A stretch of DNA of 64,000 nt from Octopus bimaculoides (lineage: Eukaryota): the NCBI RefSeq assembly GCF_001194135.2, contig NC_068983.1, positions 118,818,431-118,882,430 of the forward strand. The letters are read 5' to 3'. Position numbers and translations under genes: made by a program. Under the pieces are notes generated by a model, which did not search any database, had not been told where the DNA came from, and worked only from the letters and a program-made list of their open reading frames with translations. Below, piece after piece: positions 18,650-59,729 of this stretch; the stretch's first letter is position 1, and each line of letters opens with the position of its first letter.

Positions 18650-19075
18650 TGTAAAGAAAAAAGTTTTGAATGGTACAACAATGCACTATAATACAAAACA
18701 TGGACTATATACTTGTTGTAATTTAGTTATCTATAGTCCGATGATATTTCGGAATACAATTCCTTCTTCAGATCTTCTTAGATGGAGTCTCTGCTATCAA
18801 CTGTTTACTAACGGCTTTTCTTTTCTTTTCCCGGAAGTGTCGCAGTAGTAGTCCTACGAAGCTCCTTCCGGAATTCCTCATGAGAAGTGCGTGAGGTCGG
18901 CTATGCTTCAGTCTCGTGTGTGTTGGTATATCTGTAGCGCTGCTTCTAAGTTATGTGTTATACGTGCAGCTTCTCTTTTTTTTTGTTATAAACAATACAT
19001 GAGCATGTTATTAAGAATGAACCTACACACGTTCAGATGTAGCTAAATAATGTATTGATTACCAATCTCCAGCCT
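18650..19075 (-). mobile_element. Penelope-like element 3' remnant
   Basis: Minus-strand EAARITHNLEAALQIYQH resembles the GIY-YIG C-terminal LEAxxI motif and is followed by a hammerhead motif. Confidence 0.4.
18729..18783 (-). ncRNA. Minimal type I hammerhead ribozyme motif
   Basis: Minus strand: AUCUA-agaa-GAU CUGAAGA A GGAAU ugu AUUCC GAAA UAU C AUC-ggacua-UAGAU. Core boxes, 5-bp stem II, palindromic AUAU stem III and a split stem I are all present. Confidence 0.7.
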
Positions 19076-25862: not shown

Positions 25863-26075
<213 letters not shown>

Positions 26076-33551: not shown

Positions 33552-33969
33552 AGTGGAGGCGCAATGGCCCAGTGGTTAGGGCAGCGGACTCGCGGTCATA
33601 GGATCGCGGTTTCGATTCCCAGACNNNNNNNNNNTCATAGGATCGCGGTTTCGATTCCCAGACCGGGCGTTGTGAGTGTTTATTGAACGAAAACACCTAA
33701 AGCTCCATGAGGCCCATCCGGCAGGGGATGGTGACGAACCCTGCTGTACTCTTTCACCACAACTTTCTCTCACTCTTACTTCTTGTTTCTGTTGTGCCTG
33801 TAATTCAAAGGGTCAGCATTGTCACGCTGAATACCCCCGAGAACTACGTTAAGGGTACACGTGTGTGTGGAGTGCTCAGCCACTTGCACGTTAATTTCAC
33901 GAGCAGGCTGTTCCGTTGATCGGATCAACTGGAACGCTCGACGTCGTAAGCGACGGAGTGCCAACAACA
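33552..33969 (+). mobile_element. tRNA-derived SINE family B, tail variant 2
   Basis: Same head as 31902; 3' end GGAACGCTCGACGTCGTAAGCGACGGAGTGCCAACAACA; contains a 10-N gap with duplicated flanks. Confidence 0.9.
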
Positions 33970-34586: not shown

Positions 34587-34854
34587 TCACTCTTTTACTT
34601 GTTTCTGTAACTTTTACTGCGGCCATGGTGGAGCACCGCCTTAAAGAGTTTTAGTTGAAGAAATCGACCCCAAGGCTTACTTTTGCAGGCCTAGTATTAT
34701 TCTACTAGTCTCTTTTATCGAACCGCTAAGTTCGGGGACACAACCACACTAACATCGGTTGTCAAGCGATGGCAGGGTAAGAAACACACGGGACTGAACC
34801 CAGAACCATGTGGTTGTGAAACAAGCGTCTTACCACACAGGAACGCTTGCGCCT
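34587..34854 (-). mobile_element. tRNA-derived SINE family C (degenerate, deleted)
   Basis: GGGACTGAACCCAGAACCATGTGGTTG...TTACCACACAG is the reverse complement of the head seen at 41007. Confidence 0.75.
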
Positions 34855-35307: not shown

Positions 35308-35679
35308 ATCGTCGTCGTAACACTCCGTCGGTTACGACGACGAGGGTTCCAGTTGATCCGATCAACGAAACAGCCTGCTCGTGAAATTAACGTGTAAGTG
35401 GCTGAGCACTCCACAGATACGTGTACCTTTAACGTAGTTCTCTGGGAGATTCAGCGTGACAAAGCTGGCCCCTTTGAAATGCAGGTACAACAGAGACAAA
35501 GAGTGAGAGAAAGTTGTGGTGAGAGTACAGCAGGGTTCGCCACCACCCGCTGCCGGAGCCTCGTGGAACTTTAGGTGTTTTCGCTCAATAAACACTCACA
35601 AAGCCCGGTCTGGGAATCGAAACCGCGACCCCACGACTGCAAGTCTGGTGCCCTAACTACTGGGCCATTGCGCCTCCAC
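35308..35679 (-). mobile_element. SINE family B, tail variant 2
   Basis: Reverse complement of the 33552 copy with an internal deletion. Confidence 0.9.
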
Positions 35680-40413: not shown

Positions 40414-40527
<114 letters not shown>

Positions 40528-40528
40528 C

Positions 40529-40911
40529 TGTGACAATTATTCGGTAGCCATGATAAAACTCCGAGTTTCGGATGTCGGGGCGGACACCCACGCCGCCATC
40601 TCTTCAGTTATCTGGCCATCGAAAAAATTCTATGAAAATGACCGTTAAACGAAGGGAAATTACTGTGTGGGGTACGCATGTGTATGTATGTACTTGTGCG
40701 CTTACGCGAATACTATGAACATTTTTACTCCCTTACCTTTACTCCTTCCCCTCACATAGCGGTCATTCTAATAGCTCTTTTGTCTTAATAACGGTCAATC
40801 ATACAGGAATTTCCCTTTGTTTAACCGTCATTTTCATAGCATTTTTTCGATGGCCAGATAACTGAAGAAATGGCAGCGTGGGTTTCCGCCCCGACATCCG
40901 ACATTGTCACA
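40529..40911. mobile_element. Fold-back element with ~102-bp inverted arms and TGTGACAAT...ATTGTCACA termini
   Basis: 40568-40669 versus the reverse complement of 40800-40901: 8 mismatches in 102 nt by manual count; terminal 9-mers inverted; flanks TATC/TATT. Confidence 0.85.
40545..40618 (-). ncRNA. Type I hammerhead ribozyme, apparently complete
   Basis: Minus strand: UGGCCAGAUAA CUGAAGA [GAUGGCGG-cgugggugu-CCGCcccgaCAUCC] GAAA CUCGGAG U U UUAUC(A)UGGCUA. 11-bp stem I with one bulge, conserved core, branched stem II, 3-bp stem III. Confidence 0.8.
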
Positions 40912-41006
40912 TATTATTTACAGATAAATTCCTCTATTTACATAATATCGAGGTCTCTTTCTTTCTTTTGTTGTCTTACCCTTTCTATCAATATATATAT
41001 ATATTA

Positions 41007-41246
41007 TAGGCGTAGGAGTGGCTGTGTGGTAAGTAGCTTGCTTACTAACCACATGGTTCCGGGTTCAGTCCCACTACGTGGCACCTTGGGCAAGTGTCTT
41101 CTACTATAGCCTCGGGCCGACCAAAGCCTTGTGAGTGGATTTGGTAGACGGAAACTGAAAGAAGTCCGTCGTATATATGTGTATATATGTATGTGTGTGT
41201 ATATGTTTGCGTGTCTGTGTTTGTCCCCCCAACATCGCTTGACAAC
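41007..41246 (+). mobile_element. tRNA-derived SINE family C (CORE-like body, TA/TG-rich segment)
   Basis: A box TGGCTGTGTGG, B box GGTTCAGTCCC, GGCACCTTGGGCAAGTGTCTTCTAC; runs into a gap. Confidence 0.88.
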
Positions 41247-41885: not shown

Positions 41886-42410
41886 ATGGAAATATCCAAA
41901 GAGCATTTGAGGCACATAATGCTTTATGAGTACAAAAAAGGAAACTCTGCAGCCGAAGCGACTCGAAACATACACTCAGTTTATGGGAAAGAATGCTTGA
42001 ATGAAAGAACTTGCAGAAGATGGTTTGCAAAATTCAGAAGTGGAGATTTCAGCCTCGCAGATGAAGATTGAGTTTGATGATAAGCTCCTTGAGGCATTAC
42101 TTGATGAAAATCCTGCATTATCAATTGAAGAATTGTCAATAAAACTTAGTTCAAACCATAAAGCTTAGTTCATCATCATCTTCAACAACTTGGAAAGGTT
42201 CCTAAACTTGGAAAATGGGTGCCTCATGAATTGTCCAAAAGCAACCGCAAATCCAGAGTTGACATCTGTTCTCTCCATTCTCGCGAACTCATTTCGCTCT
42301 TTTTGGATAGACTTGTGACAGGTGACGGAAAATGGATCTTCTATTGAAATGTTAAACGTCGTAAACAGTGGCTTAGTAAAAGGGAAAAGGCTCAACCTTA
42401 TTCGAAGACT
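41886..42410 (+). mobile_element. Mariner transposase pseudogene fragment (N-terminal HTH to first catalytic Asp)
   Basis: MEISKEHLRHIMLYEYKKGNSAAEATRNIHSVYG...RRWFAKFRSGDFSL; GKWVPHEL; LDRLVTGDGKW; stops and frameshifts. Confidence 0.9.
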
Positions 42411-52665: not shown

Positions 52666-52799
52666 TCAGGAGTGTCTGTGTGGCAAGTAACTTGCTTACC
52701 AACCACATGACACCTTGAGCAAATGTCTTCCGCTATAGCCTTGGGCTGACCAAAGCCTTGTGAGTGGATTTGGTAGACAGAAACTCAAAGAAATTCGCC

Positions 52800-52842
<43 letters not shown>

Positions 52843-57572: not shown

Positions 57573-57619
<47 letters not shown>

Positions 57620-57620
<1 letters not shown>

Positions 57621-58517
57621 GTAGTCTGATCAATAAGTATCCGGACTATTACCATAGTAACGAAACTAAAGCACGCAAAGTAAAGCCGCTTCGCACAGGC
57701 TGACATTGAACTCTGCTGTACATGCGCACTAAATTTTAGCGTTCTAGCTCACTTCCGCTGTTTACAGCAGTGCTTGAAAATAGCGTGTGTAACGTGTTAT
57801 CATCGTATTCCCCGTAAGAGAGAAAGTTGACCAGAGAATCTGCTTCTAATTTCGTCAAAAGCTTAGCAGTACCTGCTCAGAGGCCTACGCAAAGTTATCA
57901 AAAAGTTTTCACCGTTCTCGACTCAGTCAAGGAGATCTTGTGCAACAGAAAGCTGAATGTCTCTTTGGTCAGCTGAAAGCAGCTTTGGCACAAGTGTTGG
58001 CAGATATGCGTCTCATACCTAAATCTTCAGTGATAATGGACTGAACTGAACTGAACTGTAACTAATCTGCACATCCTCTGATAACTTACAGATGGCGGTT
58101 CGACCATTTCCCCTCATAACTGCATGCACATCTGCGATGTTTTTCTCAGTTCTGCGGGTTGCTCGTCTCCGAGAACGTTCGTCACTCTCGACATTTTTTT
58201 CGGCCATTTTGGAAACGTCTGAACCCCTCGTACATTTGAATGGATGCACTCCTCTCTATCCACTTTCTGCAATTTTGCGTTGGCCTCTCACTAGGTATCG
58301 CCATGACAACTTTTTTCTGTTATGGTCAATGCGACGATCACACGTTACAGACAATATTTCCAAGCACTGCTGTAAACAGGGGAAGTGAGCTAGAACGTTA
58401 AAAGTTAGTGTGCGTGCACAACGGAGATCAAGGTCAAACTGTACCAAGCAACTGCACTCTGTATGCTTTAGCTTTCTTACTATGACAACAGTCCGGATAC
58501 TTATTGATCAGACCTTG
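57620..58517. mobile_element. Mariner element composed of two inward-facing 5' ends, with TA TSD
   Basis: TIRs CGTAGTCTGATCAATAAGTATCCGGACT and AGTCCGGATACTTATTGATCAGACCTTG flanked by TA; transposase N-terminal remnants on + (~57815-57910) and on - (~58330-57915). Confidence 0.85.
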
Positions 58518-59729
58518 TATATATGTAAATATACATATATATACATACATACACATGTGTGTGTTTGTGTGTGCGTGTGTGTGGTTGTATGTGGTGGGGC
58601 GTGTATATATTACTGTAACTATTCATTTAAAACCCAGTAATATAGCTGTACTAAGGAATGAGTTAAAAATCACAAAAGTTATATTTAATTCTTTAGTGTT
58701 GTAATTTCATACTGTGGAAGACCTTCATGAATTCAGAATGTAAACATAATATTTCTCAGATATTATTTATCAATTAATTTCATTTATCCCTCCGGAGTTG
58801 ACAGCATAAGTACCAGTAATAACCACCCGTACCTTTTATGTATGCATGTATGTATGTATATATGTATGTATGTATTTATGCGCCTGTGTGTATATATATA
58901 TATATATGTATACATATATATATATATATATATTTATGATTACACACACATACACACACACACATATAGACACATGTATGTAAGTATGTATATATGTCTT
59001 AATGTATGTTTTCATGTATGTATGTATGTATGCATTTACGTATGTATATGTTATATGTTTGTATGTATGAACACATGAGTTGTGGTAACGTAATAAATCA
59101 TTAATTAGGCAAATCAACGAAGGAGTCTCTACGATGTCAGTTGATCTGACATCACACTACGCTGTCTTGGAGGAAGAGTGGATTTAGTCCCTGATACACT
59201 GTGTTTAAAAGACGGGAAAAATGAAAGATGAATAGGAAAGGAAATGGAATTGGGATTGTCATGGCCAGAACTCCATGGGAATCGTAATTATGAGTTTTAT
59301 AAATTTCAATCAATATACATCATACACATGCTATGCATCATTGCCAAAATGATAATTTCGAGTTCTCAGATGGGATTGTTGTGAATCTGTTCTTAGCGAT
59401 GTCCTCTACGTTGAACATGGTATATGCATTGAATTTGACTTGCCGCTTTTATTCCGACAGTGTACATTACGCTATCGCCTGTATAACTTATTCAGAAGTG
59501 ACGTATATATTGTTAGATACTTTACATAGCTGAGACCAAATACTAAACAACCAAAATGAAAGTTTTTACCTCGCTCTCACATGAGTTGTTTTAGTATTTA
59601 AACTTAGTTTATTAAGATCAATCTTGAAGAAGCATTGAAAACTGATATAGCAGTACCATTCTATCAAATTTATAAAGTGGTGTAATAAATCTGTATATCA
59701 TTCATACTTTAAGCGAATAAGAGATATTA

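What the first reader, a model, noticed from the sequence alone, without database searches (positions are those of the whole stretch)
40529..40911. Ribozyme-tipped inverted-repeat element: candidate undescribed non-autonomous mobile unit
Seen: 102-nt arms (8 mismatches) around a 130-nt spacer, inverted termini TGTGACAAT/ATTGTCACA, and flanks TATC/TATT next to a (TA)n tract. The right arm carries the same hammerhead on the plus strand up to CCGA but lacks ~29 nt (stem III, cleavage site, 3' stem I); the loss fits a deletion between two TCGG repeats. Inference: the ancestor had an outward-facing hammerhead at each end, so transcripts of either strand would be trimmed near their 3' ends. A read-through RNA would bury the ribozyme in a long duplex, whereas RNA started inside the spacer would not, giving a possible conformational switch. 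The TGT..ACA ends with a 4-bp TSD recall Ginger-type DNA transposons, while inverted hammerhead repeats recall Penelope-like elements; I know of no described element combining these features.
Basis: partly seen in the sequence, partly recalled or inferred. Interest (0 to 1): 0.88.

Follow-up and report, generated by a model that had tools for sequence, protein, structure and literature searches.

The report
Back-to-back retroelement tails with hammerhead motif
The inverted repeat is real, but it is most likely two truncated tail ends of an octopus hammerhead-carrying retroelement (Penelope-like type) inserted head-to-head in a TA microsatellite, an arrangement already described for such elements and not a new kind of mobile element.

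Summary
The left arm (minus strand, 40540-40623) carries a near-complete type I hammerhead: full core, a 15-bp helix I, a long helix II, a 3-bp helix III, and predicted cleavage 28 nt from the arm end. A minimal descriptor matches only this site (11 of 1000 simulated windows had any match). It has one extra C beside G12, and Rfam does not report it. A second, paralogous copy was found, read antisense into the C-terminus of an Octopus bimaculoides gene model. It has the long form of the end, so the right arm suffered a deletion, and it also abuts TA-repeat codons. Its flank resembles the window's right flank beyond the supposed terminus, which undermines the proposed termini and the TATC/TATT duplication. 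Two 5'-truncated copies head-to-head with 3' ends outward, a hammerhead near the 3' end and a (TA)n target are published hallmarks of Penelope-like elements, which make up about 6.8% of the O. vulgaris genome. No direct link to a Penelope reverse transcriptase could be made with these tools. Verdict: an ordinary, decayed member of a known kind.

The parts
40416..40527 (.). (AC)42(AT)14 microsatellite directly outside the left end; probable insertion target
   Evidence: Tandem Repeats Finder; sequence
40529..40678 (-). Left copy: 5'-truncated 3'-terminal fragment of the repeat family. Its sense strand is the minus strand and its 3' end is at 40529.
   Evidence: Inverted-repeat arm 40568-40669 plus weak extension. 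The outer 99 nt match the C-terminus of P0001 in the antisense frame (33 aa, 82% identity).
40540..40623 (-). Type I hammerhead-like motif. Helix I: 40608-40623 pairs with 40540-40556, 4+6+5 bp. CUGAAGA is the reverse complement of 40601-40607. Helix II lies in 40570-40600. GAAA is the reverse complement of 40566-40569. Helix III is ACU[CGG]AGU, 40558-40566.
   Evidence: Folding, (hammerhead-constrained -27.3 versus MFE -31.0 kcal/mol). Descriptor test, (only hit in the window; 11 of 1000 simulated windows). Not reported by Rfam.
40556..40557 (-). Predicted cleavage site GUU|UUAUC: after U17 (40557), 28 nt from the arm end at 40529
   Evidence: Inferred from the hammerhead mapping; not tested experimentally
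40538..40567 (-). 30-nt segment (helix III, cleavage site, 3' strand of helix I) that is replaced by 1 nt in the right arm
   Evidence: Present in the independent copy P0001c (CDNYSVAMIKLRVSDV identical), so it is ancestral.
40670..40799 (.). So-called spacer. The left part is (TG/TA)-like junction sequence. The right part belongs to the longer right copy: a third copy of an 18-nt arm motif lies at 40758-40775 (+).
   Evidence: 3 matches against 0.31 expected; the third is in the spacer, in the orientation of the right copy
40758..40911 (+). Right copy (minimum extent); its sense strand is the plus strand and its 3' end points right
40846..40902 (+). Truncated, dead hammerhead remnant: 5' strand of helix I, CUGAAGA (40862-40868), A at 40869 in place of G10.1, helix II. 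GAAA, helix III, the cleavage site and the 3' strand of helix I are missing.
40912..40929 (+). Possible continuation of the right copy beyond the supposed terminus (weak evidence)
   Evidence: Codon-compatibility with the flank of P0001c: 14 of 18 positions, P=0.004 (window null) or 0.022 (shuffle). The left flank gives 8 of 18.

Best explanation
This is an old, inactive insertion made of two 5'-truncated 3'-terminal fragments of one octopus repeat family, joined head-to-head with their 3' ends pointing outward. It sits at a (CA)n(TA)n microsatellite. The family carries a type I hammerhead-like motif about 28 nt from the end of the left arm. The most likely parent is a Penelope-like retroelement, or a short non-autonomous derivative of one (retrozyme or SINE-like) mobilised by Penelope enzymes. 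Proposed mechanism (inferred): the GIY-YIG endonuclease cuts both strands of the TA-rich target; reverse transcription is primed from both free 3' ends on the 3' region of element RNA; the two incomplete cDNAs (about 150 nt and at least 154 nt) are joined in the middle. That yields an inverted repeat whose 'spacer' is the extra 5' part of the longer copy plus junction sequence. The arms then diverged by 8%. The right copy lost 29 nt between short CCGA/TCGG repeats and also changed G10.1 to A, which destroyed its ribozyme. In the family's master copies the hammerhead would process element transcripts; at this locus it is a relic. What is shown: the repeat, the motif, the second copy, the polarity of the deletion and the TA-rich flanks. 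What is inferred: Penelope parentage and priming from both strands.
For: The architecture matches published Penelope-like insertions. Those show strong 5' truncation, an inverted 5'-truncated copy adjacent at the 5' end forming inverted repeats, a hammerhead near the 3' end, a 30-40 bp extension at one end only and a bias for (TA)n microsatellites (PMC8557442). Dual hammerhead motifs 100-700 bp apart on opposite strands were attributed to truncated Penelope-like elements (PMC4209133). A purified Penelope-like protein cleaves and extends both DNA strands and starts reverse transcription downstream of the hammerhead cut site on uncleaved RNA (PMC11167929). In the window, both copies have their sense 3' ends outward. 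The hammerhead-like motif is non-random and nearly coincides with the MFE fold. (AT)14 abuts the left end. A second copy, at another locus, has the same end sequence and is also preceded by TA-repeat codons IYIYTYI. The right part of the spacer carries a direct subrepeat of the right copy, so the two copies have unequal lengths, as expected for independent 5' truncation. The right copy and the second copy seem to share about 18 nt more at the 3' end than the left copy, which is compatible with a one-sided extension. The two arms are closer to each other (3 differences in the 60-nt stretch 40568-40627) than the left arm is to the second copy (at least 6 differences in 54 nt), which fits one event or one source. 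Penelope-like elements make up about 6.83% of the O. vulgaris genome, with 190 families. Rfam-type hammerheads are reported in a squid genome.
Against: No homology to any Penelope consensus, reverse transcriptase or GIY-YIG domain could be shown. The window holds no other copy. No reverse-transcriptase ORF lies beside the element. No octopus DNA could be reached in the collections, and the supplement with mollusc consensus sequences is not held. The hammerhead differs from the metazoan Penelope type described in 2014: it has an extra nucleotide 3' rather than 5' of helix II, a 3-bp helix III with a non-palindromic loop, and a very long helix I. The 29-nt difference between the arms is subterminal, so it is not the classical terminal 'tail'. 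The evidence for a one-sided 3' extension rests on back-translating one protein (P about 0.004-0.02).
Confidence: 0.6

Rival explanations
1. One reading: a self-contained non-autonomous mobile unit with terminal inverted repeats (TGT...ACA) and a 4-bp target duplication. It would be moved as a whole by a DDE transposase (Ginger-like) or would be a hairpin-type retrozyme, with a ribozyme at each tip.
For: Long arms ending in a shared 9-mer. The similarity between the two arms stops at that 9-mer on both sides. The same end sequence recurs at a second locus.
Against: The target duplication is only 3 of 4 bases in TA-rich sequence. The 9-mers are the continuation of the long repeat across an indel, not separate short TIRs. 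The second copy's flank matches the right flank for about 18 nt beyond the proposed terminus, so the terminus and the TSD are doubtful. The spacer is partly a 5' extension of one copy. No second example of the paired form was found, and no transposase relative. All hammerhead-bearing animal repeats in the papers read here are retroelements.
Confidence: 0.1
2. A one-off DNA-level rearrangement. A single truncated retroelement tail was duplicated in inverted orientation by fold-back repair or replication template switching, unrelated to the insertion mechanism.
For: Only one paired example is known. The junction contains microsatellite-like sequence (40670-40710), which is prone to replication errors.
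Against: A segmental inverted duplication would not be expected to stop at the element boundary on both sides. The outer flanks show no inverted similarity. The two copies differ in 5' extent and possibly in 3' extent.
Confidence: 0.12
3. Two independent insertions of the same family, in opposite orientation, into one microsatellite hot spot.
For: The family appears to target TA-rich microsatellites. The copies have different lengths. Microsatellite-like sequence lies between them.
Against: The arms share all six residues at which the second copy differs. That needs the same subfamily at about the same time, landing within 130 bp.
Confidence: 0.1
4. The arms are the 3' tail of a retroposon unrelated to Penelope (for example a LINE or SINE with a TA-rich tail), and the hammerhead-like fold is a fortuitous or unrelated hairpin.
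For: Rfam does not recognise a hammerhead. There is an extra C at the helix II/G12 junction. The MFE fold pairs CUGA with UCGG. TA-rich sequence follows the 3' end in all three arms, so it could be an element tail rather than a target.
Against: The full conserved core plus three helices gives P about 0.01 per window with a minimal descriptor, and the real helices are much longer. Rfam also misses a textbook minimal hammerhead at 18747-18771, so its silence is weak evidence.
Confidence: 0.08

Closest known systems
Penelope-like element (PLE) insertions with an inverted 5'-truncated copy and a hammerhead in the pseudo-LTR (Evgen'ev and Arkhipova; Cervera and de la Pena 2014, PMC4209133; Craig et al. 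2021, PMC8557442)
   Same: Head-to-head 5'-truncated copies with 3' ends outward; a hammerhead motif close to the 3' end; the copy ends downstream of the cut site, so the template was uncleaved RNA; insertion at a (TA)n microsatellite; a possible one-sided 3' extension; abundance in Octopus.
   Different: No reverse-transcriptase/GIY-YIG ORF and no consensus homology were demonstrated. Both copies are very short (about 150 and at least 154 nt). The hammerhead has a long helix I, a 3-bp helix III with a CGG loop, and an extra C 3' of helix II, rather than the usual extra nucleotide between A9 and G10.1.
Animal non-LTR retrozymes (Cervera and de la Pena 2020, PMC7229834; Li et al. 2026 preprint, 10.64898/2026.07.22.740005)
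   Same: Short non-coding repeats that carry a type I hammerhead. They are proposed to derive from the pseudo-LTRs of Penelope-like elements and to be mobilised by them.
   Different: Retrozymes are head-to-tail tandem repeats that yield circular RNAs. Here the two units are inverted, no tandem copy is present, and the unit length is unknown.
Dual minimal hammerheads on opposite strands in Schistosoma mansoni (PMC4209133)
   Same: Two hammerhead motifs 100-700 bp apart on opposite strands, interpreted as truncated Penelope-like elements. Here the two CUGAAGA boxes lie about 260 bp apart.
   Different: The Schistosoma motifs lack helix III and are thought to act as dimers. Here helix III exists in the intact arm.
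Ginger DNA transposons and MITEs (features recalled from memory: TGT...ACA termini, 4-bp target duplication)
   Same: TGT/ACA at the outer ends; inverted arms; small size.
   Different: The duplication is imperfect and lies in TA-rich sequence. The termini are probably not family termini. No transposase relative was found. No ribozymes are described for Ginger elements in the papers read here.

Membership tests
Hammerhead ribozyme, type I | Conserved core C3 U4 G5 A6 N7 G8 A9 / G12 A13 A14 / A15.1-U16.1 / H17 | tested here: met
   The minus strand has CUGAAGA, GAA, A15.1-U16.1, C15.2-G16.2 and U17. This holds for the left arm only.
Hammerhead ribozyme, type I | Three helices around the core, with helix I open | tested here: met
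   Helix I 4+6+5 bp, helix II 4+3+4 bp, helix III 3 bp with a CGG loop. The descriptor hits only this site; 11 of 1000 simulated windows had a hit.
Hammerhead ribozyme, type I | G10.1-C11.1 closes helix II directly against A9 and G12, with no insertion | tested here: not met
   There is one extra C, either between helix II and G12 or as a bulge at 11.2. The strict descriptor gives no hit (allow3=0).
Hammerhead ribozyme, type I | Scores at or above the gathering threshold of an Rfam hammerhead model | tested here: not met
   No hammerhead family was reported at gathering score or at E<=10. This is a weak test, because a textbook minimal hammerhead in the same window is also missed.
Hammerhead ribozyme, type I | Self-cleavage at the predicted site | not testable with these tools
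   Needs in vitro transcription and a cleavage assay.
Penelope-like element (insertion structure) | 5'-truncated copy with an adjacent inverted 5'-truncated copy, 3' ends outward | tested here: met
   the definition is from PMC8557442.
Penelope-like element (insertion structure) | Insertion at a microsatellite, (TA)n in several clades | tested here: met
   (AT)14 abuts the left end. The second copy is preceded by TA-repeat codons.
Penelope-like element (insertion structure) | 30-40 bp 'tail' extension at one end only | tested here: inconclusive
   The right copy and P0001c may extend at least 18 nt beyond the end of the left copy (14 of 18 positions, P 0.004-0.02). The 29-nt indel is subterminal and is not a tail.
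Penelope-like element (insertion structure) | Telomerase-like reverse transcriptase plus GIY-YIG ORF, or sequence homology of the fragment to the 3' end of such an element | not testable with these tools
   No octopus DNA or Penelope-like consensus is reachable. No such ORF is near the element, as expected for short truncated copies.
Animal non-LTR retrozyme | Head-to-tail tandem units, each with a type I hammerhead | tested here: not met
   The units are inverted. There is no tandem copy in the window.
Ginger / TIR DNA transposon or MITE | Perfect target-site duplication flanking defined terminal inverted repeats | tested here: not met
   TATC versus TATT. The right 'flank' resembles the flank of the second copy, so it is probably element sequence.
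Ginger / TIR DNA transposon or MITE | Many copies sharing both termini; an autonomous relative with a DDE transposase | not testable with these tools
   Only one further arm was found, and its DNA is not retrievable.

The most novel reading that the evidence does not exclude
The paired, inverted form is itself the transposing unit: a 'hairpin retrozyme' family of octopus in which an outward-facing hammerhead at each tip trims transcripts of either strand, and the long duplex acts as a switch or as an ADAR/small-RNA substrate. The ribozyme would be a new hammerhead variant with an extended helix I and a bulge 3' of helix II.
Probability: 0.06. Interest if true: 0.6.

Novelty: new member of a known kind. 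Interest (0 to 1): 0.2.

Why it matters
The direct importance is small. It is a worked example of how the complex tandem or inverted insertions of Penelope-type retroelements can look like a novel TIR element. It also shows that Rfam models miss hammerhead variants of this kind: two candidates in one 64-kb octopus window were both unreported. If the left-arm motif cleaves, it would add a cephalopod hammerhead variant with an unusual helix II junction. The near-perfect duplex of about 120 bp would, if transcribed, be a plausible ADAR or small-RNA substrate in an animal known for heavy RNA editing, but nothing here shows transcription. The second copy also shows that an O. bimaculoides gene model (A0A0L8HW34) ends in translated repeat and microsatellite sequence, which is an annotation caveat.

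Tried and rejected
- Rfam at gathering score on the whole window, and at E<=10 on 651 nt and on 119 nt, reported no hammerhead. I do not treat this as decisive, because a textbook minimal hammerhead at 18747-18771 is also missed.
- My first mapping of the hammerhead used helix III = UCGG...CCGA with cleavage at AUA. It needed three irregularities and was 8.4 kcal/mol worse than the MFE. I replaced it with the mapping.
- BLASTN of the element against the window found no other copy.
- Exact 21- and 23-mer scans of the metagenome, viral and prokaryote-genome collections gave nothing except two chance bacterial 21-26-mers.
- A six-frame 'spurious ORF' search of 5.8 billion proteins gave one hit. 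Its DNA is not on record.
A single-frame query was not run, because weaker hits than the 31 bits of P0001 could not be significant.
- The supplement of Craig et al. is not held. The O. vulgaris supplement has no sequences.
- The sense-frame ORFs of the arms have no Pfam match, so the arms are not a coding C-terminus.
- Apparent compensatory changes in helix II between this copy and P0001c depend on back-translation and on which pairing register is chosen. I do not use them as evidence.
- The 29-nt indel as the Penelope 'tail' was rejected, because the 9-mer beyond it is shared by both arms.
- A Pfam scan of the region upstream of the 18.7-kb hammerhead motif for reverse-transcriptase remnants found nothing.

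Full report
CONTEXT. The window is a draft eukaryotic assembly. It has 34% G+C, 5621 N and many (CA)n, (TA)n and (ACAT)n microsatellites. It also holds a SINE-like repeat present three times and a mariner remnant. The only external relative of the element is in an Octopus bimaculoides protein. The window is therefore very probably from Octopus; calling the 41008-41175 repeat an octopus SINE rests on my memory only.

OBSERVATION. The inverted repeat is exactly as described. The arms are 40568-40669 and 40800-40901, 102 nt, 92% complementary, 130 nt apart. Outside them lie TGTGACAAT (40529-40537) and ATTGTCACA (40903-40911). The flanks are TATC and TATT, and (AC)42(AT)14 lies directly to the left. 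The left arm has 30 nt (40538-40567) where the right arm has a single C, a net 29-nt difference. TCGG flanks the segment, but a clean TCGG-to-TCGG deletion would leave TAT where the right arm has G, so the fit is approximate. A transcript through the whole unit would fold into a hairpin of about 120 bp (-202.8 kcal/mol, z = -17.7).

HAMMERHEAD. The minus strand of the left arm reads as follows:
- 5' strand of helix I: UUCG-A-UGGCCA-GAUAA
- core box: CUGAAGA
- helix II: G AUG...CAU C (4+3+4 bp)
- one extra C
- GAA
- helix III: ACU[CGG]AGU
- U17, the predicted cleavage point
- 3' strand of helix I: UUAUC-A-UGGCUA-C-CGAA
- then UAAUUGUCACA to the end of the arm.
All conserved core positions, C15.2-G16.2 and a non-G at position 17 are present. 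The hammerhead-constrained fold (-27.3 kcal/mol) has the same architecture as the MFE (-31.0 kcal/mol). The two differ only in that the MFE pairs CUGA with UCGG.

A minimal type I descriptor finds only this site in the window, and finds a hit in 11 of 1000 simulated windows. An earlier, looser descriptor gave 0 of 300. The two core boxes alone are not significant: 2 found against 0.73 expected. Against the motif stand the extra C at the helix II/G12 junction (the strict descriptor fails) and the silence of Rfam. That silence is weak evidence. The window holds a second motif at 18747-18771 (-) with every hallmark of the minimal Penelope-type hammerhead described in PMC4209133, and Rfam misses that one too. 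I conclude that the left arm carries a structurally near-complete hammerhead whose activity is untested. The right arm has A in place of G10.1 and lacks GAAA, helix III, the cleavage site and the 3' strand of helix I, so it is dead.

A SECOND COPY. I translated both arms in six frames and searched 5.8 billion proteins. The idea was that copies of a repeat are sometimes read into gene models. One hit came back: P0001, UniRef A0A0L8HW34, O. bimaculoides. Its C-terminus is ...ISIYIYTYISVNII-CDNYSVAMIKLRVSDVEADALDGISSVIGPSKKML. From CDN onward this is the antisense-frame translation of 40529-40627 (33 residues, 82% identity). The rest of the protein is not encoded in the window, so this copy is at another locus. 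Four things follow.
- The element belongs to a dispersed family.
- The 16 residues CDNYSVAMIKLRVSDV, which cover the 9-mer and the whole 30-nt segment, are identical.
- That copy is also preceded by TA-repeat codons (IYIYTYI).
- The six codons just outside its CDN are compatible with the window's right flank at 14 of 18 positions (P=0.004 against random window 18-mers, 0.022 against shuffles). The left flank gives 8 of 18.
The last point is weak evidence, because it comes from one back-translated protein. It suggests that the family continues at least 18 nt beyond 40911. If so, ATTGTCACA is merely where the shorter left copy ends, and TATT is element sequence rather than a target duplication.

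THE SPACER. An 18-nt motif of the arms (AACSGTCATTYTMATAGC) occurs a third time at 40758-40775 (+). This is inside the spacer, in the orientation of the right copy, 65 nt upstream of the right arm's own copy. The right half of the spacer is therefore the 5' continuation of a longer right copy. The left half (40670-40710) is (TG/TA)-like junction sequence. The two copies have different 5' truncation points.

WHAT IT IS. The structure is two 5'-truncated 3' ends of one family, head-to-head, with 3' ends outward. A hammerhead lies near each 3' end, and the insertion sits beside (TA)n. This is the published anatomy of Penelope-like element insertions:
- strong 5' truncation;
- hammerhead motifs near the 3' ends;
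- a 30-40 bp extension at one end only;
- microsatellite targets, including (TA)n (PMC8557442).
Cervera and de la Pena reported pairs of hammerhead motifs 100-700 bp apart on opposite strands and ascribed them to truncated Penelope-like elements (PMC4209133). A purified Penelope-like protein nicks and extends both DNA strands, and it starts reverse transcription downstream of the hammerhead cut site on uncleaved RNA (PMC11167929). That explains both the head-to-head geometry and why the genomic copy ends 28 nt past the predicted cut. Penelope-like elements make up about 6.83% of the O. vulgaris genome, with 190 families. Animal retrozymes are argued to be non-autonomous derivatives of their pseudo-LTRs.

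In the 60-nt stretch 40568-40627 the two arms differ at 3 positions. The second copy differs from the left arm at 6 or more positions in 54 nt of that stretch, and at all six of those residues the right arm agrees with the left. This fits one insertion event or one source. The 8% divergence between the arms, with several changes at CpG, marks the insertion as old.

WHAT IS NOT SHOWN. I could not link the arm to a Penelope reverse transcriptase or consensus. No octopus DNA is reachable in the collections, the relevant supplement is not held, and no such ORF lies nearby. The hammerhead also departs from the 2014 metazoan Penelope consensus. Parentage is therefore an inference (confidence 0.6), not a demonstrated membership.

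RIVALS.
- A one-off inverted duplication at the DNA level (0.12).
- Two independent insertions into a microsatellite hot spot (0.10).
- A non-Penelope retroposon tail with a fortuitous hammerhead-like fold (0.08).
A single genome-wide BLASTN would separate them.

VERDICT. The deletion inference and the family status are supported. The reading as a new class with Ginger-like features is not supported. The finding is best filed as a decayed member of a known kind, of low interest. The only open point is whether this hammerhead variant cleaves.

Noticed in passing
window 18741-18780 (-), next to the assembly gap at about 17.99-18.62 kb: GAU CUGAAGA A GGAAU-UGU-AUUCC GAAA UA UC AUC. This matches the minimal Penelope-type hammerhead of PMC4209133: an extra nucleotide after A9, a G10.1-C11.1 pair, palindromic AUAU at 15.1-16.1, cleavage at UC, and a 3-bp helix I. 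Rfam does not report it. No reverse-transcriptase remnant was detected upstream by Pfam.
   Followed up: partly
window 41886-42068 (+), continuing with stops to about 42.4 kb: Remnant of a mariner/Mos1-type transposase (Pfam HTH_48, E=8e-25), about 1 kb right of the element and just after an assembly gap. It is unrelated to the inverted repeat.
   Followed up: partly
window 41008-41175 (+); also 52668-52804 (+) and 34790-34854 (-): A SINE-like repeat, preceded by a short (TA)7 tract, present three times in the window (75-82% identity). ARAGORN finds no tRNA in it. Calling it an octopus SINE is from memory.
   Followed up: partly
P0001 (UniRef A0A0L8HW34_OCTBM), residues about 423-472: The last 50 or so residues of this O. 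bimaculoides gene model are translated from a TA microsatellite plus the antisense strand of a copy of this repeat. This is probably an annotation artefact or an exonised repeat. A fresh Pfam scan of the protein found no domain, although the database lists PF28443.
   Followed up: partly
window 40537-40599 (-) and 40870-41109 (+): An AUG sits at the first bases of helix II in both arms (MAAWVSAPTS...). In the Anolis Penelope-like element the ORF also starts at stem II (PMC11167929). Here the left-arm ORF stops after 20 codons, so this is probably coincidence.
   Followed up: no
window 57581-57825 / 58312-58556; 33807-33960 / 35321-35474; 25865-26074: Other long inverted repeats: 245 nt at 80%; 154 nt at 91%; and a palindromic array of about 100 nt. 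They are probably oppositely oriented repeat copies or satellite-like sequence. Not examined.
   Followed up: no
window 40670-40710: The left part of the spacer is (TG/TA)-like microsatellite sequence. It has the opposite polarity to the (AC)n(AT)n on the left flank. It could be captured target or filler at the junction of the two copies.
   Followed up: no
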